Positions 3,679 to 63,950 of a stretch of DNA of 64,000 bases are shown here, piece by piece. Source of the DNA: Octopus sinensis (taxonomy: Eukaryota); NCBI RefSeq assembly GCF_006345805.1, contig NC_043014.1:28458001-28522000 (forward strand), in the 5' to 3' direction. The notes under the pieces are model-generated. The model ran no database searches, had not been told where the DNA came from, and was given only the letters and a program-made list of their open reading frames with translations. The stretch's first letter is position 1. Every line of letters starts with the position of its first letter. Both the position numbers and the translations under genes were made by a program.

Positions 3679-4072
3679 TTTACTCTTTTACTTGTTTCAG
3701 TCATTTGACAGCGGCCATGGTGGTGCACCGCCTTTAGTCGAGCAAATCGACCCCAGGACTTATTCTTTGTAAGCTTAGTACTTATTCTATCGGTCTCTTT
3801 TGCCGAACCGCTAAGTTACGGGGACGTAAACACACCAGCATCGGTTGTCAAGCGATGTTGATGGGACAAACACAGACACACAAACACACACACACATATG
3901 TATATATTCATATATACAACGGGCTTCTTTCAGTTTTCGTCTACCAAATCCACTCACAAGTCTTTGGTCGACCCGAGTCTATAGTAGAATACACTTGCTC
4001 TAGGTGCCACGCAATGGGACTGAACCCGGAACCATGTGGTTCTTAAGCAAGGTACTTACCACACAACCGCAC
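3679..4072 (-). mobile_element. tRNA-derived SINE family A (internal CA/TA microsatellite)
   Basis: Matches the multi-copy consensus GGCGCAGGAGTGGCTGTGTGGTAAGTAGCTTG...GACTGAAACAAGTAAAAGAG seen at least 12 times in the window. Confidence 0.9.
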
Positions 4073-4810: not shown

Positions 4811-5197
4811 TACTCTTTTACTCTTTTACTTGTTTCAGTCATTTCACTGTGGCCATGCTGAAGCACCGCCTTTAGTCGAGCAAATCGACTCCAGGACTTG
4901 TTCTTTGTAAGCCTAGTACTTATTCTATCGGTCTCTTTTGTCGAACCGCTAAGTTACGGGGATGCAAATACACCATCATCGGTTGTCAAACGATGTTGGG
5001 GGGACAAACACAGACACACAAACATACATATATATATATAAATACATATATATATGACGGGCTTCTTTCAGTTTCCGTCTACCAAACCAACACTCAATGC
5101 TTTAGTTGAAGACACTTGCCCAAGGTGCAACGCAGTGGGGCCGAACCCGGAACCATGTGGCTCGCAAGCAAGCTACTTACCACATAACCACTCCTAC
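4811..5197 (-). mobile_element. SINE family A
   Basis: Near full-length copy of the same consensus. Confidence 0.9.
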
Positions 5198-5694: not shown

Positions 5695-6901
5695 TTGGGC
5701 TGAGTCATAAATAATTTCTATATTTTGGAAGTAAATTGTAATGACATATTTCTAACTTCAGATATTTAAAATTGAAATGGAAACTACCGATTTTAAAAGA
5801 CCCTCATCTGCCATTCGTATTTAAGCAGCGAAAGTGTGCACATCATAGTTTAATATTAAATTTCACTCCCCTAAAATGGATGAACTGGAAGTGCATATTC
5901 AACATGTGATGTTGTGAGAGTTTAAGAATGGAAATAACGCCACAGAAACAGTTAAGAAAATGTGTAGTGTTTATAGTCAACTGAACAGCAAGTAAGAAAT
6001 TGGTTTTCAAAGCTTCGTTCCCGAAATTTGTCATTGAGGCCTGATGCTCTTCATGCTTTAAGAGAATTAGTGGAATTAAAATCCTTGTAAAAGTACTTGG
6101 GAATCAGCAGTTGACCTCAACACATCCAATCACGATCTGCTGCCACTTTGAAAGGATAGGAAAAGTCAGCAAGCTGAGTGTTTGAGTTCCCCATACTCTT
6201 AGTGAGAAGAATAGGGAAGATCACGTTTACAGGGACAAGTCTTCTTTCAAGGTACAAAAATGACCCGTTTTTCATCAATATCATTACAGGTGGTAGAAAA
6301 TGGGTCTTTTATGACAATCTTAAATGCAAAAGGGTATTGACTGATAAGGATAAATCCCCACAACTTATCTGAAAGGCTGAGCTCTATGTAAGGAAGGTTA
6401 TACAGCCTGCATAGTGGAATCAAACACTAAAGCCAACATATGCTCTGAACAGTTATAACATGTGCATGAAAAGCTTTAAAGAAAATGCCCAATTCTCGTC
6501 AATGGGAGAAACATTGTGCTTCTCCATGATAAGGCAAGACCATATTAGCAAGGATCATGCAGGATAAAATATTGGATTTGGGCTGGTGTGTTCTATTCCA
6601 TTCACCGTATTCACTGAAACTTACACCAACCGATTTCTATCTTCGCTCTATACAAAATGCTCTGATGGGGAAAAAAAGTTTCCCTAGAAAATCAAGTGAA
6701 AACGTGAGTGGAAAGCTTCTTCATGTACGGACCAGAGGAATTGAATTTTACTCAAGAGCAATCAAAAAGCTATCTGATAAATGGCAAGAAGTCATTCAAA
6801 ATAATGGCAACTATACTGATAATTGAAAATTATCCATTGTAAACTTTGTTCATAAGTAAATGTATTTAACAAAATCGGAAATTATTTATAAGCCAAACCA
6901 A
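5695..6901 (+). mobile_element. Mariner (Hsmar1/Mos1-like) transposon, decayed, with TIRs
   Basis: TIRs TTGGGCTGAGTCATAAATAATTTC and GAAATTATTTATAAGCCAAACCAA flanked by TA. Broken ORF from 5878: MDELEVHIQHVML*EFKNGNNATET, IITGGRKWVFYDN, LHDKARP, HSPYSLKLTPTDFYL. Confidence 0.9.
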
Positions 6902-9620: not shown

Positions 9621-9763
9621 TAAATTAAGTAGAGAAGTAGTATTGACAATCCATTTATCTTTATAATTGTATTATACCCATATTTCTATGGTATTCAGCT
9701 GACTTCCAGTGAACTGGATGTTTAACACACCACTTTGAAGGATCTCTTTTCCTCCTCATTTGG

Positions 9764-9884
<121 letters not shown>

Positions 9885-9902
9885 AATATATATATGTATG
9901 TA

Positions 9903-10640
9903 TATTGTAAGCGACGTTTTGAAACATGAAATTCATCACAAAGCATTTCAACAATGCGAAAATTTTATTCATCAAATAAATACTATTACAATCAACACAT
10001 TTTTGCCAACGAGTTGCAAGTTTGTTTATTCTGGTAGCATAAAAATCTGGAGTTCTGGAGCTGATGGACTCTTTGTATGCACTTTCAGCATCGGTTTGAT
10101 TTTTGAACTCCTTCTCTCGCAGGAAACCGTCAAGGTGCTTGAAAAAGTGGTAGTCAGTAGGGGAAAGGTCTGGGGGAATAATGTGGGTGGGGAAGAACTT
10201 CATAGCCAAGTACGCTCAACTTCTGGAGTGTCATTAGGAAGACGTGTTTTCGGGCATTGTCATGAAGAATGATTGGCCCTCTTCTGTTGGCCAATCTGAG
10301 ACAGAGAAGTAGCAGATTTTCGTTCATTTTGGCAATTCCACGGTAATATGTTTCTACAGTAATGGTTTTTCTGTGTTTTAAGAAGTTATATTGGATGAGA
10401 CCAACAGTACACCACTAAACAGTTACCATAACCTTCTTTTTGAAGAACTTGGGTTTAGGGAAGGTTTTTGGTGCTTCATTTTGGTCCAACCACTGCAAAG
10501 AACTTTTTATTATTGTACAGAATCCACTTTTCACCGCAAGTTACAATACTGTCGAGAAATGGATAGGTCTGGTTACGGAGAAGAAGCGACGTCAAATCTC
10601 ATATCTGTGCATATTTTGATATATATACAAACATGATTCA
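9903..10640 (-). mobile_element. Mariner transposase C-terminal fragment
   Basis: FLDSIVTCGEKWILYNN and PPDLSPTDYHFFKHLDGFLREKEFKNQTDAESAYKESISSRTPDFYATRINKLATRWQKCVDCN (ORF 9661..10209). Confidence 0.9.
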
Positions 10641-20630: not shown

Positions 20631-21010
20631 AGGAGTGGCTATGTGGTAAGTAGCTTGCTTACCAACCACATGGTTCCGGGTTCAGTCTCACTGCGTGGCA
20701 CCTTGGGCAAGTGTCTTCTACTATAGCCTCGGGCAGACCAAAACCTTGTGAGTGGATTTGGTAGACGGAAACTGAAAGAAGCCCGTCGTATATATATGTA
20801 TGTGCGTGTGTGTGTGTTTGTTGCTCCAACATCGTTTGACAACCGATACTAGTGTGCTTACGTCCCCGTAACTTAGCGATTCGGCAAAAGAGACCGATAG
20901 TACTAGGCTTACAAAGAATAAGTCCTGGGGTCGATTTGCTCGACTAAAGGCGGTGCTCCAGCATGGCCACAGTCAAATGTCTGAAACAAGTAAAAGAATA
21001 AAAGAATAAA
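20631..21010 (+). mobile_element. SINE family A
   Basis: Near-complete consensus ending GTAAAAGAATAAAAGAATA. Confidence 0.9.
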
Positions 21011-30059: not shown

Positions 30060-31560
30060 CCCCAACCATGCATCTTTCCTATTTATTGAGTATGACAATA
30101 TCTAGATGTGAGTGTTATATTTGTTCAACCGTCTGAAGTTTCGTATCCCACAGCACCTTTAAATAATCATTTTCAAGGATGCTTTCTGTTCAAATCTATA
30201 TCTTGTACAGATTTGCCATTGTGCTTTTAGTAACTTTATCATATTACCAGAAGCTGTATGTGCTACTGTCTCTTCTCTTTTATTCTTTTAATTGAGCTGT
30301 CTTTCTTACATGTTCTTCATGTTGTATTTTGTTCTGATAGCTTGATTCTGCGCGGCCTTATTCAGTAAATATATTCCGTGAATTTATACCGTCAGTTCTT
30401 TGGTATTACCTTTTATCCACCAAAAGGGTTCCACGCTTAGAAATACCAAATCCCATTCTGATGTCATTGCTTAGAATACTAACAAATGTATTCGATGACC
30501 TCTCAGTCTTGCCGTTAGCTTTAGGTCATCCATGAATAGCAAAATGGTTAACTATCTCCTGGTCTCTTATGCTATATTTTGCTTTACTTTTCTCAGTTCT
30601 AGGGAGTGTTCTAGAACAATGACAAACAGTATAGGGAATCTTTGGAAGTTATCCCAATTATTTTGACCTTTCCAAATGTAAGCACTCTTTCAGTTTCCCA
30701 TACCTATCTTTTATCAATTAAGTGATGGCATCTTTTATCTATCATCTTTTATTTGTTTCCGTCATTAGACTGCAGTAATTTACGGAGACGTAAACACACC
30801 AACACCGGTTGTCAAGCGATAGTAGGTGACAAACAGAGGACAACATACACACAAATGCACACACAGGCTTTTTCAGTTTCCGTCGAACACATCCATTCAC
30901 GAGGCTTTGGACGGCCCGAAGCTATTATAGAAGACACTTGCCCAAGGTACCTCGCAGTGGAACTGAACCTCCGACGCATATGGTTGGGAAGTAAGCCTCT
31001 TACCACATAGTCACGCTTGCAGTTATGGTATTTGAAATCCTGATCATTTTAAGTCTCCACGAAACCTTAGAGAGCGGGTACTATGTAATATGCTGCTTTT
31101 GTAATCGAGCTAAGCCAGTTCATCTTATTTTGTAGTATCTTAAAATCCCTTGCCAATTAATAGTAGGACATTTCTCCCTCTTGAATTCATCAGGTACCTT
31201 TTCTCTTCATTGGGGAGGAGGCAATGCTCCACTAAGTATACATACATCTTATTCACAAATGTACTTTTTAAAAGTTTCCACATGGATAGCAACCAAATTA
31301 TTTGTCTACCGTTTGAGACCACAGTAACCTTCTGCTTATCTTTCGCAATAAGAGCTGTCTTATTTTCAATTATCCTATTTCGGATGCTTCCACCGAGGAG
31401 GCAATCACTTTGTTAACTAATAGTAATAATGTTCTTCAGCCAGTACTTCGCCTGGCCCAGATGCTTTTCAAGTAGGTCCCTTGAAGCGTACTTTGTAATG
31501 AACCCATGAAACCCAGTGTGGTTACTGTGCCAAACTGCTGCTTTGCTCGTCCAAGTCTCT
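30060..31560 (-). mobile_element. R4/Dong-clade LINE RT plus REL fragment, decayed, with a SINE A insert at about 30745-31020
   Basis: Minus-strand pieces: RQIIWLLSMWKLL...LLPNEEK...SRG, LFMDDLKL, AAQNQAIRTKY, KVLWDTKLQT...HSHLDIV. Confidence 0.8.
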
Positions 31561-36119: not shown

Positions 36120-36325
36120 TCTACTAAAGGCACAAGCCTGAAATTTGGGGAGAGGGGGCCGGTCGATTACTAGTGCTTCACTCTGGTACTTAATTTATCG
36201 ATCTCAAAAGGATGAAAGGCAAAGTCGACCTCGGTCGAATTTGAACTCAGAACGTTAAGACGGACGAAATGCCGCTCAACGTTTTGCCCGGCGTGCTAAC
36301 GATGCTCTCAAGTCACTGCCTTTAC
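36120..36325 (-). mobile_element. SINE family B
   Basis: GGATGAAAGGCAAAGTCGACCTCGGTCGAATTTGAACTCAGAACG. Confidence 0.8.
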
Positions 36326-36326
36326 T

Positions 36327-36884
<558 letters not shown>

Positions 36885-37869
36885 TATCATTCAACTAATT
36901 CACAAATTACTCACACGCAGCACCTTTCAGAGCTTGTTGCTAATTCAGTTCTCAACCAAATTGAAAGCTGTTAACATTTTTATAGAGGACTGGTTCCTAG
37001 CTACATTTTGGCATAAAAAATTGAGATTTGATCCAGCAACGTTATAGGAGAGTAAGTAACTCTACTAATCAAGTTTAGATCTAAATAATTCTTTAAAATT
37101 TATAAGCAAAATATATTTGTCTTAGTTTCAATGATAGAAGAAAGTATGAAGAATTTTATAGTTTCGTTCCTATGCAACAAAAGTTTGTATAAAAAAAGTT
37201 GTGAGGTAAAATATCATTAAAAATATATAAAGCATAAATTGGATTTAAGTATAATTAACTTTTTTTTATCTCAAAAACAAACTATATTCTAATTAAGCTT
37301 AAATGACAGAACTCAATTCGAGGAATTTCATGGTATCAATCTCATGCAATGAAGTTTTAAAGGAAAAAAAGTTATGAGAGTTTGTTTCTCAAATTTTTTA
37401 TGAAGGGGACTTATAATATATGTCACCGGCGTCATTGAGGCAAGGAAAAAATTATCAACGACATCGCTAATTGATACATTTGACACATTATTAATTAGCA
37501 TAATAGCATAGCCTGGAAAAAACATGGATTACATGGAAAATGTGAGCAAGAGAAATACTATTCTTAAGATTATAAATCCTGATTATATTACAGGACAAGT
37601 TATTACACTTGGAAAAGTTCAGGACAAGTTATTACATCAGGTAAAGACAACAAGAAAATTTTTACTTAAAATATTGCAGCTAAGGATAAAATTTGAATAA
37701 TAAAAAATATTTGGTCTTAATTTACAACGTAACATTAAAATTAAAAAAGGTATCATCATTTTGTTAAAATATTGACAGACTAGAATACTTTAAAAATGAG
37801 AGCCAGAAGTAGCAATAAAGTTTTATGCAAAGTAGAATAGTATATATGGTAAGCAAATTTATGTATGTT

Positions 37870-38899
37870 ACCATATACCATTTATTTTTCCTGGGATCTT
37901 TGATTGTTTGTTTCCGCGGTGAACTTGGGTTGTCTGGGTAGATTTCTTTTTTGTTTTCTTTTGTTGATGATGCTGCTGGAAGTGTATGCCGCATAAACTG
38001 TACAATGTCCATTTCACTCTCCTTTTTTCCCCCTTTTTTGGACATTTCGGAGGTGAGTTCACTGGTTCTTCCCTTTTTCCTCTGATCATCTCCTTAAATA
38101 GTTCTTCTGTGCATTTATCATTTTCTAGGTCCACCACTCCTGTTGGCTTTCCTCGTTTTTACTTTCTCTCTGGGAACACTTTATTTTAATGTGCCCCTTC
38201 TCTCCGCATTGATAGCAGATTGGGGGTCTTCCTTCCACCACCACTCAAACTTATGTCCTCCAGTAAAATCACCTCTTCGGCGATTTCGTTCAAATCTTTT
38301 CGTCCAACCTGAATGACCATTTCTAGTCCGTATCCCCTTCAATATACCTTCTTTTTCCTTGTCACCTTTAGAATTTTGGCGTCTTCTTCAGTTTTATGCA
38401 TTATGCCTGCCACCAGCCACATTTCTTTGATTTTTGGTGGCACTCTACCTATTCTCACTCTGGTGACCCTTTTGCCGCAGTAGGTATGCAGGAGTACCCA
38501 TTTTTCTGTCTTCAGCGTCACAGTGGAGTGATTTATTGCCTCCTGTTCGTTGGCAGATCTCACCTTCACTGTGCCGTATTTTGTGCCTCTTGTATAGAAT
38601 CTTGTCAAGTTCTTAATTTCTTTCAGACATTCTTCAATTGCTTCTTCTGTAGCTATCTCTATTTTCTTGGTCGTTGTCGATAGTGTTCGGTACACCACTG
38701 TTCTTTTCTTAGTAGTGGTTCTCACTTCTGGAGGGATCAGTTTTAAACTGGATCCCTCCTTCTGAATCAGCCTGTAGTATTCTTTCAGCTTCTTCTGTCC
38801 AATTTTAATTTCTCGCACTTCTAGTGAGTTTGTGGTTGTACCTTTCCCAGCTGCTGAAGCATAACTGCCAGCATGTGCTGGAGCTTGTTCACACTCCAT
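37870..38899 (-). pseudogene. LINE-like (L1/Tx1-type) ORF1 / gag-like protein with a CCHC zinc knuckle, disrupted
   Basis: 186-aa ORF 38339..38899 (…KRVTRVRIGRVPP…). After a stop and a frameshift it continues VVEGRPPICYQCGEKGHIKIKC (C-x2-C-x4-H-x4-C), then a low-complexity tail. No ORF2 is recognisable downstream. Confidence 0.7.
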
Positions 38900-39118
38900 T
38901 TTTCTCTTTTTCTTTTTCCAGTCACTTCACCCTAAAATGGGGAAGAAGACAAGCACAAAATTTAACAGGCCCGCAGGCAAAAACACCAACGGTATTCGAC
39001 AAATTCAACAAAACTTAGTTCACCCGCACTGCACGAGGAGCACCTTCAACAAAGATGCAACAAAGTATAACATGACTTGCGTCAACTGCAATCAAAAATG
39101 ATTTAACACTAACAAAAA

Positions 39119-40809: not shown

Positions 40810-40950
40810 TCGGTGACCAACAGCGACTTCAAGAATAAAAGCAAAAAACATAACCAATGAACATATTAGTTGGACGCTCTTTGAAAGTCCGGATGGAAAA
40901 TTAAAAGTAAACATGACGTTTCGAGCATGGTTTTTCATCGGATAGCAGAA
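40810..40950 (-). mobile_element. Penelope-like tail with a degenerate minimal hammerhead
   Basis: Minus strand CCGATGAAAAACCATGCTCGAAACGTCATG...GAGCGTCCAACTAATATG, homologous to 2960-3138. Confidence 0.55.
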
Positions 40951-40964
40951 TATATATATCTTTA

Positions 40965-41235
40965 CACGCTAGAAGAAGCAGTCAAAATGACCAAAACCAC
41001 ATTTGAGAGCAATTTTCGAAGGGAATAAAAAATGAAAACTTTTATGTTGTTATTTTTTTTTTACGGTTATACCTAGGTTTCAGATTTCTTTAGCAAATAA
41101 AATAATTTGCTAGGCGAATCCTCATCAGTAACCGTGCCTTAACAACTAACATATAATTTAGAGACAATTTTTCATTCCCTTCGAAAATTGTTCTTAAATG
41201 TGGTTTTGGTCGTTTTGACTGCTTCTTCTAGCGTG
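40965..41235. mobile_element. MITE-like element with 69-bp TIRs
   Basis: 40965-41033 versus 41167-41235 are reverse complements with 4 mismatches by hand alignment; ends TA|CACGCTAG...CTAGCGTG|TA. Confidence 0.88.
41046..41146 (-). ncRNA. Type I hammerhead ribozyme
   Basis: Minus strand: GUUGUUA AGGC ACGGUUA CUGAUGA G GAUU CGCC UAGCAAAU UAUUUU AUUUGCUA AAGA AAUC U GAAAC CUAG GUA UAACCGU A10 UAACAAC. Intact core, 7-bp stem I plus 7-bp distal stem I, two-part stem II, palindromic stem III (ACCUAGGU), GUA cleavage triplet. Confidence 0.8.
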
Positions 41236-41785
41236 TAAAAATTACCAGTAAAAGGTAGTTTTCTCTTGTATTTAAATGTACACTATTTTATATTGAGAAT
41301 ATGTTGTCTATTGACTTTTTATAGATGCTACGCCACTGTTGGTGAAATTTCTAAGAATATTCGCAGCCCTATATATATCTTATATATATACATATATGTA
41401 TGTATGTATGTATGCATTATGTATGTATGTATGTATGTATGTATGTATGTATGTATGTATGTATGTATGTATGCATTATGTATGTATGTATGTATGTATG
41501 TATGTATGTATGTATGTATGTATGTATGTATGTATGTATGTGTGTGTGTGTGTATTAATTACGCACATATTCTCTCACGCATGCATATTGTATATATTAA
41601 CGACGGGCTTCTTTTAGTTTCCGTCTATGAAATCCACTCACAAAGTTTTGATCGGCCTGGAACTATAGCTGAAGTCACCCGCCCGAGGTGCCACGTAGTG
41701 AGACTGATCCCCAAACCATGTAACAAGGAAGCAAATTCCTTATCACACACAGCTACGCCTGGGCATATAAAATAAAAAGAACATA

Positions 41786-42477: not shown

Positions 42478-42885
42478 ATATTCTTTTATTCTTTTACATG
42501 TATCCGCCATTTGGCTGCGGCCAAACTGGAGCACCATCTTGAAGTGGTTTTAGTCGAGCAAATCGACTCCGAGACTTATTCTATGTGAACCTAGTACTGA
42601 TTCTATCGGTCACTTTTGTCGAACCGGTAGGCTACAGGGAGGTAAATACATTAACACCAGTTGTCAAGCGGTGATGAGGGGAGGGACAAACACAGATACA
42701 AAAACACACATATATATATATGTGTCTATATACGACGGGCTTCTTTTCAGTTTCCGTCTACCAAATCTACTCACAGGGCTTTGGTCAGCCCGAGGCTATA
42801 GTAGAAGACTAGATGCTACGCAGTGGTACCGAACCTAGAGCTTTGTGGTTGGGAAGCTAGCTTCTTACCACATAGCCACGCCTGA
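42478..42885 (-). mobile_element. SINE family A
   Basis: Degenerate near-full-length copy. Confidence 0.85.
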
Positions 42886-44918: not shown

Positions 44919-45018
44919 NNNNNNNNNNNNNNNNNNNNNNNNNNNNNNNNNNNNNNNNNNNNNNNNNNNNNNNNNNNNNNNNNNNNNNNNNNNNNNNNNN
45001 NNNNNNNNNNNNNNNNNN
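44919..45018. other. Assembly gap (100 N)
   Basis: Directly visible; true length unknown. Confidence 0.99.
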
Positions 45019-45296: not shown

Positions 45297-45700
45297 GGCG
45301 CAGGAGTGGCTGTGTTGTAAGTAGCTTGTTTACCAGCCACATGGTTCCGGGTTCAGTCCCACTGCGTGGCACCTTGGGCAAGTGTCTTCTACTATAGCCT
45401 CGGGCCGACCAAAGCCTTGTGAGTGGATTTGGTAGACGGAAACTGAAAGAAGCCTGTCGTATATATGTATATATGTATATAAGTGTGTGTGTTTGTGTGT
45501 CTGTGTTTGTCCCCTAGCATTGCTTGACAACCGATGCTGATGTGTTTATGTCACCGTTACTTAGCGGTTCGGAAAAAGAGACCGATAGAAGTACTGGGCT
45601 TACAAAAAAATAGGTCCCGGGGTCGAGTTGCTCGATTAAAGGCGGTGCTTTAGCATGGCTGCAGTCAAATGACTGAAACAAGTAAAAGAGTAAAAGAGTA
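45297..45700 (+). mobile_element. SINE family A, full length
   Basis: Complete consensus. Confidence 0.92.
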
Positions 45701-46228: not shown

Positions 46229-47450
46229 GTGCCGATCTCAATATTTGGGATACTTGATTGGTGTGTAGAGGAAATCCACTCCATAGATACGAGAACTGGG
46301 AACTTCCACGAAAAGTGTGATGTTGACAGGCTCTACCTAAGAAGAAATTAAGGTGGTAGAGGCCTGAGATCAGTGCAGACGGCCCTCGAATGCCGTATGG
46401 TATCACTCAGGCAGCAACTGATAAACAGTAGCAACAAAAATAAATATATAAATGCAGTGAGCAACATTGTACGAGTTTGCATTGAGCTCCTCAAGAAGCC
46501 CTCTCTTCTTGATGATCCAAAGCAGCTAGGCTCTATTACCTCAGAGAAGACCTGGATGGAAAGCATTCAGCATACAAAAAAAAAAAAAAGAAAAGAAAAA
46601 TGACTATGTTGTCCGGAAGCTGGAAGAAGACAGTAGAATTGACACGAAGCGCAGCCGCTTTTGGACACAAGACCACTAAATCACACTTTTGAAGACTATG
46701 CATGTGCAATCCAGGAACAGGAGATTGCCATAAAGTACCCGGTGAACAAGAGAGACAGTGATGCTCTTGTGCAACCGCATGTGTAGGCTATGTCATGTTT
46801 CTGTGCAAGACTTCGTGTATGTGATTAGCAGCTGTCTAAAAATGTCGTCATAGTACTACTTCCATATGCGGCACGATGTTGTCGCTAAAACAATTTACAA
46901 TACCATCTGCAAAAATGACTGTTCTGAAATAAACTTAGAAAATCCCTCTGTTATGGAATACATTCATAAACACCAACTCAGGGAATATTAGTGGAATATT
47001 CTCATCAAAACTTCTGTGAAATGTAAGCATAACAAGCCGGATATTGTTGTTTGTGACAGAGGGACAAAGCTATGTGCCGTCACAATGGCCAGCTGCCCTG
47101 CAGATATAAATATCTCTTTGAAACTCAAAGAAAAAGAGAACAACTGCGTCGAAACCTCCAGCTTCTATATCCAGACTATGAATTCGTATTCATAACAAAA
47201 ATAATTGGAGCACTAGGTTTTGTTAGTAAATGCTTAAAGAAGAATCTGGATAAACTAGGATTTTCAGAAAGAGAAACCGACTGGTTAATTCCTATATTAC
47301 AAGTGCAATCTGTGAGTGGATCAGTAAAAATATGCAAGACTTTTCTCAAATTCCAAATGTGAATTTATCTGTGTTAACTACATCCCAAAGATGGGACCTT
47401 GTATCTTTGTTGGAAACTGACTTCTCCTCCGTGGAAGATTTATAATAATA
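46229..47450 (+). mobile_element. R4/Dong-clade LINE, 5'-truncated
   Basis: FHEKCDVDRLYLRRN*GGRGL; CRLCH...VISSCLKMSS*YYFHMRHDVVAK; KHNKPDIVV; LLYPDYEFVFITKIIGALG...ICKTFLKFQM*; short (TAA) tail. Confidence 0.88.
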
Positions 47451-48947: not shown

Positions 48948-49700
48948 CACACAAATGTCTTTTTTGTCTGGTGCCTGAAATATTTTAACGAATTCTTAAG
49001 TGATTTTGCCTGCTAAATTCAAAAGTAACTTCAGTTTGTCTCTATCAGGTCTAGTTTTCTGGCTAGACCTGATACAGTAAGTAGTTTATTCATACAAGAG
49101 GTATATAATATGAATCAATAAAGAGAGCGTAACAAAAAACAAAATACAAATAAAAATTCAAAATTGAAAATGCACATTTGCAAAGATTTTTGTCAGAAAA
49201 TTCAAGGAATAAATTTTAGGCTTCTTTGTGCACCGTGAATGTTGAGCAACAGGAGTATCTCGTTTTAAACACAAGCAATGATCTGCCTTCATCACAGCGT
49301 CCCAACGTCCTTGGTACCGAATTTCCCTCTCTTTGATATCCTGATGGAATCGTTCGCCTTGCTCATCGCATACATCGAGATTTTCAGGAAAACGATCAAG
49401 ACGACTAAAAAGATAGCGCATTTTGATCCTCATATTCGCGCCAGTATCACGAAAAGTTGATATCAAGTTGGTAACAAGGTTTTAATAGTTTTCACTTTTG
49501 TGTTTTACAAGGAAATTTTACTCTACTTCTGCAAAGGCTAGCCAAGCTGATGCTTCATTTTCGCTCATCGCTTTCACGATAATTGGGTCCTTCAAGAGAT
49601 TGCGGATCTGTGGTCCGTCAAAAATCCCTACTTTAAGTTTTTCAATCGTCAAGTCTGGAAATACTCTGCAGATATGTGTAGGGGCGTCTGATTGCTTTTT
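48948..49700 (-). mobile_element. Chapaev3 (CMC) transposon 3' fragment
   Basis: EKLKVGIFDGPQIRNLLKD...GANMRIKMRYLFSRLDRFPENL..DEQGERFHQDI...RYQGRW...LKRD matches the Chapaev3 C-terminus as recalled; terminus begins CAC on the + strand. Confidence 0.75.
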
Positions 49701-61599: not shown

Positions 61600-63950
61600 A
61601 CCTACTTAACTGTAAGGTTGTGAAGGAAAGCATCTTGTTTTAACCACAATCCTTTAAATCTTAAGAAGGTCATGTGGATTTTTGTAATCCCAAATATCGT
61701 GATCATTTGTAGTGCATGAATTAAGGATTTGTGTTCTCTCCCCAACAGTCCAAGTTCAATCATACTTCGCTCCAGATGGGTCGGTATGTATCCTGTTGCT
61801 CCAAAAATAATACTATAAAACTGAAAGCATATCTTGGGAACTGGATTTGCAAAATCCAAAATCAATGGCCCATTGATGTCCTCTTTCTCTTGTATATTTT
61901 TAACCACATTGGTGTTCAGGGGACAACTGATTTCCACAACAACACATATCTTTTCCTTGTGGTCCCATAACAATATATGGCCGTTGTATTTTAATTGGCT
62001 GGCTGTTCTGATTTTTAAGTTCCACCATTATTCTTTTCACCCATCGGTTTCAATATAGTTATCTTCGTCTTTAGGTATTTTCTTTTTTGTTACCCTATTC
62101 CAGACTGTTCTGGCCACTGCATCATGCTTCACGGGAAAATAATATCTGGAAGACATTCTCTCACAGTTGGCAGTAATGTGGTTGATGTCTTCAGGCTTGG
62201 TCTTGCACAGTCTACGTTTGTTGTCTGTCAACGTTTTCTGCCTTTTATGCTATAGGTACTCCCTTGTTCTCGAATTGTATGGAATTAGCCTTCAAAGGCA
62301 GGATGTCATAAACTTTTGGGAGGACAGGCACTGCGAATGTTTTGAGGGCAATATGCTTGCTGTAGGCTGGGAGTTCTGATGACTATATTCTCATTACTTT
62401 GCTGAGGTATTCATTCCTGGTCCTCTCCGAATATGTGGGCCCATAATATCTGTCTAAGATACCTATAACTTCTACCTGACTATAGGGATTATATTGGCAA
62501 GCTGTTCAACTTTAGGTTTTCAGAGGTGGGAACGTTTTATTATGAAACGTGCACATTTCTACTGACCAAATTTCATCACAATGTCAGTAGAAAATGGATA
62601 ATGCGGTCCAATTGCTTTTTTATATGGTTGATATTTGGTCTATACAGTTCCTGGTCATCGAGAAAGAATAGAAGGGAGATACTTCTGGATGCATCTCCCT
62701 AGTCTCTATGTTTTGTGAGCAGGTATGATTGTCGGTTTAATAAGAGGAGGAAGAGCAACACTAACAGGCTATCACGCTGAATGATGCCTTTTTGGCAGCG
62801 AATACTATTCGGCTCAAGTTTCTCCTTCTCACATCTAAGGAGCAAAGTGGTGTACCAAGTCTTGGTCAGGCTTTCAGTAACACTCACTAATGGCTTTCAA
62901 TTACACTCACTAACTGTAAAGCCTTGATAATCCAGCTATGTAGTATACTATGAAAAGTCTTCTGGTGGTCCACACACACTACGGTTAAGTTCTTGCTATT
63001 TTTTACAGTTTTTTTTCTGGAGCATTTTTTTAATTAGTAGCTACTGTGTGCAGCCCTCACCTCCTTCTTTCCTTCAACTTGCTCAGGTGTTATAATGTTG
63101 TTGGTGGCACAATGTATCCAGGGTATAATAAGTGCATTATGTTCTAGCAGACTATTGCGTGGTAATTTTTAGCAGGGTGGTTTGGCTGTTCTTGGGGATG
63201 AGTAGTTATAGTTGATGACCATCGGGGCAGTTCTTTGGTGCCTTTGATACTATTTCCATACAACTTTATGAAATCTCGACGATAAATGGTAAAATTCTTT
63301 AGCCAATTAGTACCTGTTATGAGATCTAGGCCTAGGGCTTTCCTGTCTGACATTTTCTGTAGAATTGTTTCCAGTATTTGCCGTCTGTTTCATATTACTT
63401 TTGCAGAATATGTTGGCAGTAGTCCTTCTCCAGTTCTTTTAGCCATACAGCTTATTTGTTCAACTCATCAATTGTTTCCTACACAGATCTCCAGTAGCCC
63501 TCAACACAAACTTTTGTGTGGGATGTATTTTACAAAGATGGAGCCTTTCGAATTGAAGCTGCAATAAACTAATTTGGAATCTTTAGCAAATAATTTATTG
63601 CACATTTGCAGTTTATTTGTTGTAGACTTATATTTTAGTTTTTCAGCTGTATCTGTGAGTTATTGTTTCGGCTGGCACAGTTAGGGGTTAAGGTTTTTGA
63701 ATCATGTAACACCAGATCACTATTCTATTTTCTTTTTTTTTTTGAGATTTCCCTGATGTCGTGTGAAGTTGTTGTATGTGTTACATTTCATAACAACAAC
63801 GATCTCTGGGATACTTTTTCGCAGGAATAAAATTTTATTTTTTAAGCTACGTGCCCATGCTGGTTGAGACGTTTTGGTTGAATCTCGATTGCGTGACTTC
63901 AGCGCTTTGCGATACGCTAGTAATGTAAGAGCTGAGACATATATAAAAAA
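61600..63950 (-). mobile_element. R4/Dong-clade LINE, decayed, with internal deletions; may extend past the window
   Basis: KALGLDLITGTNWLKNF...KNYHAIVC; KGIIQRDSLLVLLFLLLLN; RLCKTKPEDINHITANCERMSSRYYFPVKHDAVAR; LWDHKEKICVVVEISCP...KIHMTFLRF. Confidence 0.85.

What the first reader, a model, noticed from the sequence alone, without database searches (positions are those of the whole stretch)
40965..41235. Hammerhead ribozyme filling the spacer of a TIR-bounded MITE-like element (ribozyme-capped foldback)
Seen: 69-bp TIRs (4 mismatches) with TA on both flanks enclose 133 bp, of which about 100 bp fold on the minus strand into a type I hammerhead. It has an exact CUGAUGA and GAAA core, a perfect 7-bp stem I plus a 7-bp distal helix across an internal loop, a 5+8-bp stem II, a palindromic stem III (ACCUAGGU) and a GUA cleavage site between 41070 and 41069. 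The only core-adjacent deviation is G10.1-U11.1 instead of G-C. Established: animal genomic hammerheads are mostly tied to Penelope-like element termini and tandem retrozymes, and palindromic stem III variants can cleave as dimers; class II MITEs are not normally described as ribozyme carriers. Inference: a transcript would form a long rod (TIR duplex continuing stem I) capped by a self-cleaving apex. This could be an undescribed ribozyme-bearing MITE family or a hybrid RNA/DNA mobile element. Cleavage would open the hairpin into a nicked dsRNA with three A-C mismatches, a plausible ADAR or Dicer substrate.
Basis: partly seen in the sequence, partly recalled or inferred. Interest (0 to 1): 0.92.

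Follow-up and report, generated by a model that had tools for sequence, protein, structure and literature searches.

The report
Hammerhead ribozyme inside an octopus foldback repeat
A real hammerhead self-cleaving RNA motif sits at the tip of a 285-bp inverted-repeat insertion in an octopus genome, and it most likely marks a broken Penelope-like retrotransposon copy, a known carrier of such ribozymes, rather than a new kind of ribozyme-carrying DNA transposon.

Summary
On the minus strand, 41135-41063 has a complete type I hammerhead core, a 7-bp helix I, a 5+8-bp helix II, and a palindromic helix III (ACCUAGGU). Cleavage would fall at 41070/41069. It is the only such motif in the window, against about 0.002-0.01 per shuffled window. 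No Rfam hammerhead model detects it.

The MITE interpretation is not supported. The short palindromic helix III is the hallmark of the dimer-acting hammerheads of Penelope-like elements (PLEs) and their retrozyme derivatives. PLE insertions are known to be 5'-truncated, head-to-head inverted, palindromic at the junction, and targeted to (TA)n. Penelope elements are abundant in octopus. The "TA duplication" cannot be told apart from the repeat itself, which runs 5 nt further.

The G10.1-U11.1 deviation and all five arm mismatches are transitions, which fits a decaying copy.

I found no second copy in the window, in 100 kb of Octopus vulgaris, or in the metagenome, viral and prokaryote scans, so family status is untested.

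Verdict: a new member of a known kind. PLE-type origin is about 0.58 likely, a ribozyme-bearing MITE about 0.1. Interest is 0.3.

The parts
40951..40962 (.). Left copy of the 12-nt direct repeat TATATATATCTT. It is a candidate target-site duplication of a 407-bp insertion (40963-41369).
   Evidence: D3. Both copies are exact, and the bases just upstream of each differ. The empirical chance of such a (TA)4-type 12-mer recurring 100-520 nt downstream in this window is about 8%, so the support is weak.
40958..41033 (.). In the minus-sense RNA it is the 3' strand of the rod and the 3' end of the longer, hammerhead-bearing copy.
41034..41166 (-). 133-nt centre. It is an imperfect native hairpin: a 31-nt 5' flank, the 73-nt hammerhead, and a 29-nt 3' flank. 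The hammerhead is centred on the symmetry axis of the repeat.
   Evidence: Flank-to-flank complementarity is only marginal: -9.0 kcal/mol, reached by 55 of 1000 shuffles.
41063..41135 (-). Type I hammerhead ribozyme motif. Helix I 41135-41129 / 41069-41063; CUGAUGA 41128-41122; helix II 41121-41082; GAA 41081-41079; palindromic helix III ACCUAGGU 41078-41071; A17 at 41070; predicted cleavage between 41070 and 41069.
   Evidence: Descriptor scans. The hammerhead fold at -18.1 kcal/mol lies 2.3 kcal/mol above the MFE. The dimer is 11 kcal/mol more stable than two monomers, through an 8-bp intermolecular helix III. No Rfam hit.
41082..41082 (-). U11.1, the only deviation next to the core (G10.1-U11.1). 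It precedes G12, so a C11.1-G12 CpG that decayed to TpG would explain it.
   Evidence: Read from the sequence (plus strand 41081-82 is CA). Window CpG observed/expected is 0.77. The ancestral state is inferred.
41167..41242 (.). Right arm of the inverted repeat. It is the short inverted copy, joined head-to-head to the longer copy at 41166/41167.
   Evidence: All 5 differences between the arms are transitions, and one is at a CpG.
41243..41369 (.). 127-nt unique stretch between the right arm and the right copy of the 12-nt repeat. It is either a one-sided 3' extension ('tail') of the insertion or simply flanking DNA.
   Evidence: It has no similarity to the rest of the element, the window, or the O. 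vulgaris loci.
41370..41381 (.). Right copy of the 12-nt direct repeat TATATATATCTT, followed by a (TA)n(TATG)n microsatellite.

Best explanation
This is a small, dead-end insertion made by the Penelope-like element (PLE) retrotransposition machinery in an Octopus genome.

Origin (inferred). The source RNA has the sense of the window's minus strand. Near its 3' end it carried a native imperfect hairpin capped by a canonical metazoan type I hammerhead, followed by about 76 nt of 3'-terminal sequence. Reverse transcription was primed at an AT-rich (TA)n target and produced a severely 5'-truncated copy, 41166 to about 40960. A second, inverted copy of the last 76 nt (41167-41242) was added head-to-head. 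This could happen in two ways: the cDNA 3' end snapped back on the hairpin and copied itself, or the PLE protein primed from both target strands. Either route gives arms that were identical at birth around an older, imperfect centre. Both routes are inferred from published PLE behaviour and are not shown here.

What is shown. The arms are now 6.6% diverged and all the differences are transitions. The ribozyme has one change next to its core, G10.1-U11.1, which fits decay of a C11.1-G12 CpG.

Activity (inferred). The hammerhead has a helix III too short to form in a monomer but perfectly palindromic. It is therefore of the kind that cleaves only as a dimer of two ribozyme copies, as in tandem PLE or retrozyme transcripts. 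With one ribozyme per locus and a weakened 10.1-11.1 pair, this copy probably self-cleaves poorly if at all. Any transcript would mainly be a long hairpin RNA.
For: 1. The hammerhead is real and of the PLE/retrozyme type.
- The core and three helices are complete, and it is the only hit in the window. Chance gives about 0.002-0.01 per window.
- The palindromic helix III ACCUAGGU is unstable as a monomer (+0.9 kcal/mol). It forms an 8-bp intermolecular helix in the dimer, which is 11 kcal/mol more stable than two monomers.
- Cervera & de la Pena describe most metazoan hammerheads in these terms: type I, helix III of 1-2 bp capped by a 2-4 nt palindromic loop, active as dimers. Those in PLEs have a longer helix II, and most occur as single motifs, which the authors attribute to truncated PLEs (PMC4209133).

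2. The architecture matches published PLE insertions.
- They are 5'-truncated with an adjacent inverted copy that forms inverted repeats, and they favour (TA)n microsatellites (PMC8557442).
- Inverted pLTRs with 8-10 bp TSDs, a one-sided tail, and frequent palindromes at the inverted junction have been interpreted as self-priming (PMC3846280).
- A purified PLE protein nicks and extends both target strands and prefers AT-rich DNA (PMC11167929).

3. Features of this locus fit that picture.
- The left flank is (TA)n, and a (TA)n(TATG)n microsatellite lies about 130-140 bp to the right of the right arm.
- The centre is a hairpin with the hammerhead on the symmetry axis (31 nt and 29 nt flanks).
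- The arms are 93% complementary, while the inner flanks are only weakly complementary.
- A candidate 12-bp TSD is present.

4. The host is Octopus. Penelope elements are among its most abundant TE groups and include recently active families (PMC13282606; PMC8967140).

5. Decay signature: 5 of 5 arm mismatches are transitions, one at a CpG, and U11.1 sits in a former CpG position.
Against: - I could not retrieve any PLE, or any other copy, that carries this hammerhead or these arms. The homology to a PLE pLTR that would prove the case is therefore missing.
- There is no RT/GIY-YIG coding remnant in or beside the insertion.
- The 12-nt direct repeat is weak evidence, with about 8% empirical chance in this microsatellite-rich window.
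- If that repeat is real, it implies a 127-nt one-sided extension, much longer than the 30-40 bp PLE 'tail'.
- The 40-nt helix II is longer than the 7-8 bp described for PLE mini-hammerheads.
- No Rfam hammerhead model scores the site.
- TA dinucleotides at both ends of the 69-nt repeat also fit a Tc1/mariner MITE.
Confidence: 0.58

Rival explanations
1. A non-autonomous hairpin-RNA retroposon or solo non-LTR retrozyme unit. The whole rod (arms, inner flanks and hammerhead, possibly with the 127-nt stretch as a 5' leader on the minus strand) already existed in the RNA. In this reading helix I of a type I hammerhead is extended by the rest of a retrozyme-like molecule, and one unit was retrotransposed by PLE or LINE machinery.
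For: - In a type I hammerhead the rest of the molecule emerges from helix I, and metazoan retrozyme RNAs of 170-400 nt are highly self-paired (PMC7229834).
- The element is 285-407 bp, AT-rich, and folds as one rod with the ribozyme at the apex.
- Dispersed monomer derivatives of retrozymes are common (bioRxiv 10.64898/2026.07.22.740005).
- The hammerhead is centred on the symmetry axis.
Against: - There is no tandem arrangement and no second hammerhead within 64 kb.
- The complementarity is uneven: 93% over the outer 76 bp but only marginal over the inner 30 nt (P about 0.06). That looks like a DNA-level or cDNA-level duplication added to an older hairpin, not one evolved RNA rod.
- Known retrozyme rods are imperfect throughout (my knowledge of the published structures).
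- The DNA ends lie opposite the cleavage site, not at it.
Confidence: 0.15
2. One reading: a class II MITE (Tc1/mariner-like, TA duplication) whose internal region carries a hammerhead. This would be either a new ribozyme-bearing MITE family or a PLE-derived foldback later mobilised by a transposase.
For: - The 69-76-nt terminal inverted repeats are flanked by TA on both sides, and the total length is 271-285 bp.
- Mariner transposase remnants lie in the same window (PF01359).
- Tc1-Mariner and MITE families are numerous in O. vulgaris (PMC13282606).
- The centred hairpin geometry is natural for a foldback MITE.
Against: - The inverted repeat continues 5 nt beyond the TA with 4 of 5 matches, so the TA is not separable from the repeat.
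- No other copy turned up in the window, in 100 kb of O. vulgaris, or in the other collections.
- Nothing else in the window, including the mariner remnant regions, resembles the element's arms.
- My searches found no paper that describes a hammerhead inside a MITE.
- This exact hammerhead type is characteristic of PLEs and retrozymes.
Confidence: 0.1
3. The hammerhead is a chance look-alike in the loop of an ordinary foldback or inverted duplication, and no ribozyme was ever involved.
For: - No Rfam hammerhead model reports the site, even at E<=10 on 91 nt.
- The 10.1-11.1 pair is G-U.
- At 0.002-0.004 chance hits per 64-kb window, a genome of a few Gb would hold on the order of 100 descriptor-level false positives. 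This extrapolation uses my own figure for octopus genome size.
- A hairpin apex supplies helix I for free.
Against: - All 13 invariant core positions are present, with A15.1-U16.1 and H17.
- Helix I has 7 perfect pairs that abut the core exactly on both sides.
- Helix II has an 8-bp distal helix.
- Helix III is a perfect 8-nt palindrome of exactly the kind described for metazoan dimeric hammerheads. The palindrome requirement alone lowers the chance estimate by more than ten-fold (inference).
Confidence: 0.05

Closest known systems
Canonical metazoan type I hammerheads with a short palindromic helix III (newt satellite 2, Aedes repeats, coral, mussel and axolotl retrozymes, PLE pLTR hammerheads)
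   Same: Type I topology, the full conserved core, a 6-7 bp helix I, and a 2-3 bp helix III whose loop completes an 8-nt palindrome that predicts dimer-dependent cleavage. The context is low-GC and repeat-associated (PMC4209133; PMC3088659; PMC7229834).
   Different: Helix II is 40 nt (5 bp, a 4x4 internal loop, then 8 bp) instead of about 4-8 bp. The 10.1-11.1 pair is G-U. Loop 1 is replaced by a rod about 100 bp long. It is a single copy, not tandem. No Rfam model recognises it.
Penelope-like element insertions with inverted pLTRs (for example Pen2a_Av of Adineta vaga; Penelope/Poseidon, Neptune)
   Same: Head-to-head inverted copies with their 3' ends outward. Severe 5' truncation. A palindrome or hairpin at the inverted junction. 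An AT-rich/(TA)n target. A candidate TSD of about 10 bp. A possible extension at one end only. A hammerhead in sense orientation near the 3' end (PMC3846280; PMC8557442; PMC11167929).
   Different: No RT/GIY-YIG sequence is present and no homology to a named PLE is shown. The arms are 76 nt, against about 180-220-bp pLTRs. The putative tail is 127 nt, against 30-40 bp.
Non-LTR retrozymes (metazoan tandem repeats with type I hammerheads that give circular RNAs)
   Same: The same ribozyme type, a unit size within 150-450 bp, low GC, and a highly self-paired predicted RNA. Recent work derives them from PLE pLTRs.
   Different: They are defined by tandem arrays in which each unit has a hammerhead. 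Here there is one hammerhead and no direct repeat of the unit. The outer 76 bp is a near-perfect duplex, which is unlike an evolved rod.
Stowaway-like (Tc1/mariner) MITEs and foldback elements
   Same: Short, non-coding, with long terminal inverted repeats, TA next to both ends, and a hairpin-forming transcript.
   Different: My searches found no MITE reported to carry a self-cleaving ribozyme. The TA cannot be distinguished from the repeat. No family of copies and no matching autonomous transposon was found.

Membership tests
Hammerhead ribozyme (type I) | Invariant core C3 U4 G5 A6 N7 G8 A9 / G12 A13 A14 / A15.1-U16.1 / H17 (consensus as in Perreault et al. 2011, PMC3088659) | tested here: met
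   CUGAUGA 41128-41122, GAA 41081-41079, A15.1 at 41078, U16.1 at 41071, A17 at 41070.
Hammerhead ribozyme (type I) | Three helices abutting the core, with helix I open-ended | tested here: met
   Helix I has 7 perfect bp. Helix II has 5 bp plus 8 bp distal. Helix III has 2-3 bp intramolecular or 8 bp intermolecular. The hammerhead fold lies within 2.3 kcal/mol of the MFE.
Hammerhead ribozyme (type I) | Conserved G10.1-C11.1 pair | tested here: not met
   The pair is a G10.1-U11.1 wobble (41121/41082). It is one C-to-U transition at a CpG away from the consensus. The effect on activity is unknown.
Hammerhead ribozyme (type I) | Match to a curated covariance model (Rfam hammerhead families) | tested here: not met
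   No hammerhead family is reported at gathering score, or at E<=10 on 401 nt or 91 nt. The likely cause is the 40-nt helix II and the minimal helix III (inference).
Hammerhead ribozyme (type I) | Covariation in the helices among homologues | tested here: inconclusive
   No homologue could be retrieved, so no alignment exists.
Hammerhead ribozyme (type I) | Site-specific self-cleavage | not testable with these tools
   This needs in vitro transcription of monomer and dimer constructs.
Dimer-type metazoan hammerhead (PLE/retrozyme class) | Helix III of 1-3 bp capped by a short palindromic loop, so that two copies form an extended helix III | tested here: met
   ACCUAGGU is a perfect palindrome. 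The duplex is -11.4 kcal/mol. The dimer MFE forms this helix and is 11 kcal/mol more stable than two monomers. The definition comes from PMC4209133.
Dimer-type metazoan hammerhead (PLE/retrozyme class) | A second ribozyme copy nearby (tandem unit or second pLTR) | tested here: not met
   It is the only hammerhead-like motif in 64 kb on either strand. There is no tandem repeat of the unit.
Penelope-like element insertion | Head-to-head inverted terminal copies with a 5'-truncated body | tested here: met
   The arms 40958-41033 and 41167-41242 are inverted with their 3' ends outward relative to the hammerhead-sense strand. The longer copy is 209 nt.
Penelope-like element insertion | Target-site duplication of variable length (about 8-10 bp reported) in AT-rich/(TA)n DNA | tested here: inconclusive
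   The exact 12-nt repeat TATATATATCTT lies at 40951-62 and 41370-81, and the rebuilt empty site is a (TA)n(TATG)n microsatellite. However, the empirical chance is about 8%.
Penelope-like element insertion | One-sided 30-40 bp 3' extension ('tail') | tested here: inconclusive
   If the 12-nt repeat is the TSD, only the right arm carries an extension, but it is 127 nt long.
Penelope-like element insertion | Sequence homology to a pLTR or 3' end of an element encoding RT and a GIY-YIG endonuclease | not testable with these tools
   There is no DNA search of cephalopod genomes or of a TE library. The 100 kb of O. vulgaris I could fetch holds no copy and no hammerhead. No RT/GIY-YIG remnant adjoins the element.
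Non-LTR retrozyme | Tandem repeats of 150-450 bp, each with a type I hammerhead | tested here: not met
   There is a single unit, with no direct repeat of the unit.
Class II MITE (Tc1/mariner, Stowaway-like) | Terminal inverted repeats | tested here: met
   69-76 nt, 93-94% complementary.
Class II MITE (Tc1/mariner, Stowaway-like) | TA target-site duplication | tested here: inconclusive
   TA is present on both sides (40963-64, 41236-37). However, the inverted repeat runs on through it to 40958/41242 with 4 of 5 further matches, and TA is its own reverse complement.
Class II MITE (Tc1/mariner, Stowaway-like) | Multi-copy family of uniform length with the same termini, and TIRs shared with an autonomous transposon | tested here: inconclusive
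   No other copy was found in the 64-kb window or in 100 kb of O. vulgaris. Nothing else in the window, including the mariner remnant regions, resembles the arms. The source genome itself could not be searched.

The most novel reading that the evidence does not exclude
The element belongs to a real multi-copy family of TIR-bounded, TA-flanked foldback transposons in octopus that carry a working dimer-type hammerhead at the hairpin apex. One route to this would be a PLE-born inverted structure later captured and spread by a Tc1/mariner transposase. That would be a retro-to-DNA hybrid mobile element whose transcripts are processed into nicked long dsRNA.
Probability: 0.1. Interest if true: 0.75.

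Novelty: new member of a known kind. Interest (0 to 1): 0.3.

Why it matters
If the favoured reading is right, this is one more decayed Penelope-type insertion, and it matters in three modest ways. First, it shows that octopus genomes hold canonical dimer-type hammerheads that the current Rfam models miss, here with an unusually long 40-nt helix II. Second, it is a worked example of how PLE insertion products can pass for MITEs in TE annotation. Third, it is a source of long, near-perfect hairpin RNA in an animal with very active ADAR editing. Only if the minority reading holds, a true ribozyme-bearing DNA transposon family, would it change how self-cleaving ribozymes and class II elements are thought to relate.

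Tried and rejected
**Searches for a second copy, all negative**
- blastn of 40900-41420 against the whole window found only the self-inverted match and microsatellites.
- A protein-space search used ten stop-free frames of the element joined by X. It gave 2450 word candidates and none at E<=10.
- An exhaustive HMMER search with the 45-aa frame that spans arm plus hammerhead found only an unrelated tandem-repeat ORF.
- Exact-pattern scans were run for the hammerhead (gapped pattern) and the arm (22-mer). They covered metagenome contigs, viral contigs and prokaryote genome contigs.

**Attempts to find the window's own locus or its orthologue**
- Exact ORF look-ups failed. None of the 12 ORFs tried is on record.

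**Sampling the host genome**
- SINE-derived ORFs identified Octopus and let me fetch five 20-kb loci of O. vulgaris.
- These loci hold no copy, no descriptor hammerhead and no Rfam hammerhead.
- A 42-nt, 78% match in L003 turned out to be a different foldback and is probably chance.

**Smaller checks**
- A concatenated TE-ORF query recovered only distant hAT-like proteins.
- There is no tRNA-like head in the 127-nt stretch.
- Promoter and terminator scans were uninformative.

**Ideas rejected**
- Simple cDNA snap-back from helix I would give perfect complementarity from the apex outward. What is seen instead is a weak inner part and a strong outer part.
- A rolling-circle cDNA of a circular RNA would give direct terminal redundancy, which is absent.
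- An assembly foldback artefact would give long, identical arms, not 76 nt at 93%.
- I first rated the 12-nt direct repeat at P about 0.02. An empirical test raised this to about 0.08, so I downgraded it.
Full report
**1. What is in the sequence**

The inverted repeat is real. The repeat finder reports arms at 40958-41033 and 41167-41242, 76 nt long, 93% complementary, with 133 nt between them. A fifth mismatch lies at 40960. TA lies directly outside the 69-nt version on both sides. The 285-nt minus-strand RNA folds into one long rod at -132 kcal/mol, against -50 +/- 4 for shuffles, z = -19.7.

On the minus strand the centre reads as follows:
- ACGGUUA (41135-41129)
- CUGAUGA (41128-41122)
- a 40-nt helix II (41121-41082): GGAUU/AAUCU, a CGCC x AAGA internal loop, then UAGCAAAU/AUUUGCUA with a 6-nt loop
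- GAA (41081-41079)
- ACCUAGGU (41078-41071)
- A17 (41070)
- UAACCGU (41069-41063)

This is a complete type I hammerhead. All invariant core positions are present, and so are A15.1-U16.1 and a GUA cleavage triplet.

**2. Is it more than chance?**

A descriptor scan finds this one site in 64 kb on both strands. The descriptor requires the core, helix I >= 5 bp, helix II >= 4 bp, and helix III >= 2 bp containing A15.1-U16.1. A much looser scan finds nothing else. It uses no helix III requirement, helix I >= 4, helix II >= 3, and also allows the U3-A8 core variant.

Markov-1 shuffles give these rates:
- 0.01 relaxed hits per window in 300 windows
- 0.004 relaxed hits per window in 1180 windows
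- 0.002 hits per window of the observed quality

Across a genome of a few Gb that is still on the order of 100 false positives, so the descriptor alone is not proof. Two further points lower the chance estimate by at least another order of magnitude (inference). Helix III is a perfect 8-nt palindrome, and the motif sits exactly on the symmetry axis of a 76-bp inverted repeat.

Two points count against it. No Rfam hammerhead model reports the site at gathering score, or at E<=10 even when only 91 nt are searched. I attribute that to the 40-nt helix II and the minimal helix III, but I could not test this. The pair next to the core is G10.1-U11.1 rather than the highly conserved G-C.

The hammerhead secondary structure lies within 2.3 kcal/mol of the MFE of the 101-nt stretch. 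A monomeric 2-bp helix III costs energy (+0.9 kcal/mol). Two copies gain 11 kcal/mol by forming the 8-bp intermolecular helix III.

**3. What kind of hammerhead it is**

Cervera & de la Pena (PMC4209133) describe most metazoan hammerheads as follows. They are type I, with helix I of about 6 bp and helix III of 1-2 bp capped by a 2-4 nt palindromic loop. Such a helix III blocks cleavage by a monomer and allows an active dimer when a second copy is near. [quoted passage not shown] Perreault et al. (PMC3088659) show the same palindromic helix III for Aedes, newt and ASBVd, and note that mutant hammerheads are common in repeated elements. The motif here therefore belongs to the class tied to PLEs and to their non-autonomous derivatives, the non-LTR retrozymes (PMC7229834; bioRxiv 10.64898/2026.07.22.740005).

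**4. Host and surroundings**

SINE-like repeats in the window give frames that match predicted proteins of Octopus vulgaris and O. bimaculoides, so the window is from an Octopus genome. It is repeat-rich and microsatellite-rich. It contains mariner transposase remnants, retroelement and hAT-like fragments, and a 100-N gap.

Penelope elements are among the most abundant TE groups in octopuses. A curated O. vulgaris annotation lists 31 recently active Penelope-like families (PMC13282606; PMC8967140). Tc1-Mariner and MITE families are numerous there too.

**5. How the inverted structure most likely arose**

Published PLE insertions have these properties:
- They are 5'-truncated and often have an inverted 5'-truncated copy directly adjacent, so that inverted repeats flank the unit.
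- They favour (TA)n microsatellites (PMC8557442).
- In Adineta vaga they carry inverted pLTRs with 8-10 bp TSDs and a tail at one end only. Palindromes at the inverted junction are frequent and were interpreted as self-priming (PMC3846280).
- A purified PLE protein nicks and extends both target strands and prefers AT-rich DNA (PMC11167929).

The locus fits this point by point:
- The hammerhead-sense (minus-strand) copy runs from 41166 to about 40960 and ends at a (TA)n tract.
- The short inverted copy, 41167-41242, is joined to it head-to-head.
- The junction region is itself an imperfect hairpin with the hammerhead at its centre, with flanks of 31 and 29 nt.
- The outer arms are near-perfect (93%), while the inner flanks pair only marginally: -9.0 kcal/mol, reached by 55 of 1000 shuffles.

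That unevenness is what one expects if a native RNA hairpin was copied once and the terminal 76 nt were then duplicated in inverted orientation at insertion. The duplication could come from snap-back of the cDNA 3' end on the hairpin, or from priming on both target strands. I infer these mechanisms from the literature. Nothing here shows which one acted.

**6. Boundaries**

There are two readings.

(a) TA | CACGC...GCGTG | TA, a Tc1/mariner-style TA duplication. The inverted repeat continues through the TA for five more nucleotides with four matches, and TA is its own reverse complement. The TA therefore carries no independent information.

(b) An exact 12-nt direct repeat, TATATATATCTT, at 40951-40962 and 41370-41381.
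- The bases just upstream of the two copies differ.
- The rebuilt empty site is a plausible (TA)n(TATG)n microsatellite.
- This reading makes a 407-bp insertion with a 127-nt extension on one side only, which recalls the PLE tail but is three to four times longer.

My first estimate of chance for the 12-nt repeat was about 0.02. An empirical test on this window's own (TA)-rich 12-mers gave about 0.08. I treat this repeat as weak support only.

**7. State of the copy**

All five differences between the arms are transitions, and one is at a CpG. U11.1 is followed by G12, so the one deviation next to the core is what deamination of a C11.1-G12 CpG would produce. Window CpG observed/expected is 0.77.

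With about 3% change per arm since the duplication, an intact 13-nt core is expected in more than half of neutral copies. Its integrity is therefore no evidence of selection.

There is one ribozyme per locus, its helix III needs a partner, and the 10.1-11.1 pair is weakened. This copy is probably a poor self-cleaver (inference).

**8. The family test could not be run**

No tool allowed a DNA search of cephalopod genomes. All the indirect routes came back empty:
- the window itself
- a protein-space search with ten frames of the element
- an exhaustive HMMER search with the arm-plus-hammerhead frame
- exact-pattern scans of metagenome, viral and prokaryote contigs
- look-ups of window ORFs
- five 20-kb samples of O. 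vulgaris

**9. Verdict**

The hammerhead type has a known, near-exclusive association with PLEs and retrozymes. The structure matches PLE insertion products. Penelope elements are abundant in octopus. The TA evidence is ambiguous. Weighing these, my estimates are:
- PLE-type retro-insertion: about 0.58
- pre-formed hairpin retroposon or solo retrozyme unit: about 0.15
- ribozyme-bearing MITE: about 0.10
- chance motif: about 0.05

This is a new member of a known kind. Its mild points of interest are the long helix II, the Rfam miss, and the way it mimics a MITE.

Noticed in passing
window 41082-41121 (minus strand), helix II internal loop: In the CGCC x AAGA internal loop, three of the four oppositions are C-A. 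Each is one G-to-A transition away from a C-G pair, so the ancestral helix II may have been a continuous helix of about 17 bp. A-C mismatches are also the preferred ADAR context. I read this from the sequence only.
   Followed up: no
window 3738-4043(+), 4876-5106(+), 20662-20943(-), 30726-31007(+), 42554-42835(+), 45333-45545(-), and about 41600-41775(+): Multiple copies of a SINE-like repeat. Their ORF-like frames match 'Hypothetical predicted protein' entries of Octopus vulgaris and O. bimaculoides. This identifies the host genus and shows that repeat-derived ORFs are annotated as genes in that assembly.
   Followed up: partly
window 9664-10414(-) and 6533-6823(+): Decayed mariner transposase remnants (Pfam PF01359 at 10157-10414, E 9e-4, below the curated cut-off), interrupted by microsatellites. 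Nothing in these regions resembles the element's arms.
   Followed up: partly
window 49161-49481(-): A fragment resembling the C-terminus of hAT-like transposase-derived proteins. It is 55-75% identical to proteins P0001-P0015, including one from Penaeus vannamei.
   Followed up: no
window 61605-62027(-), 62040-62249(-), 63147-63389(-), 47057-47359(+), 38342-38926(-): Stop-free stretches that look like retroelement protein remnants. None has a Pfam hit at E<=0.01.
   Followed up: partly
window 44919-45018: A run of 100 N, which is an assembly gap inside a microsatellite-rich stretch.
   Followed up: no
L003 2198-2367 (O. vulgaris OX597823.1): A different foldback of about 170 bp with 24-bp perfect arms. 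It shares a 42-nt, 78% match with the element's arm (E 0.02). This is probably chance, but a distant TIR relationship is not excluded.
   Followed up: partly
L001 18201-18328(-), L003 14768-14873(+), L004 4540-7257(+): In the O. vulgaris loci I fetched: a U4 snRNA gene, a mir-1 precursor, and a 905-aa single-exon C2H2 zinc-finger gene for which the precomputed table showed no Pfam family.
   Followed up: no
window 36269-36894: A long, low-complexity A+T-rich tandem tract. Both strands read as poly-Ile/Tyr/Leu 'ORFs' of up to 204 aa. These are not genes.
   Followed up: no
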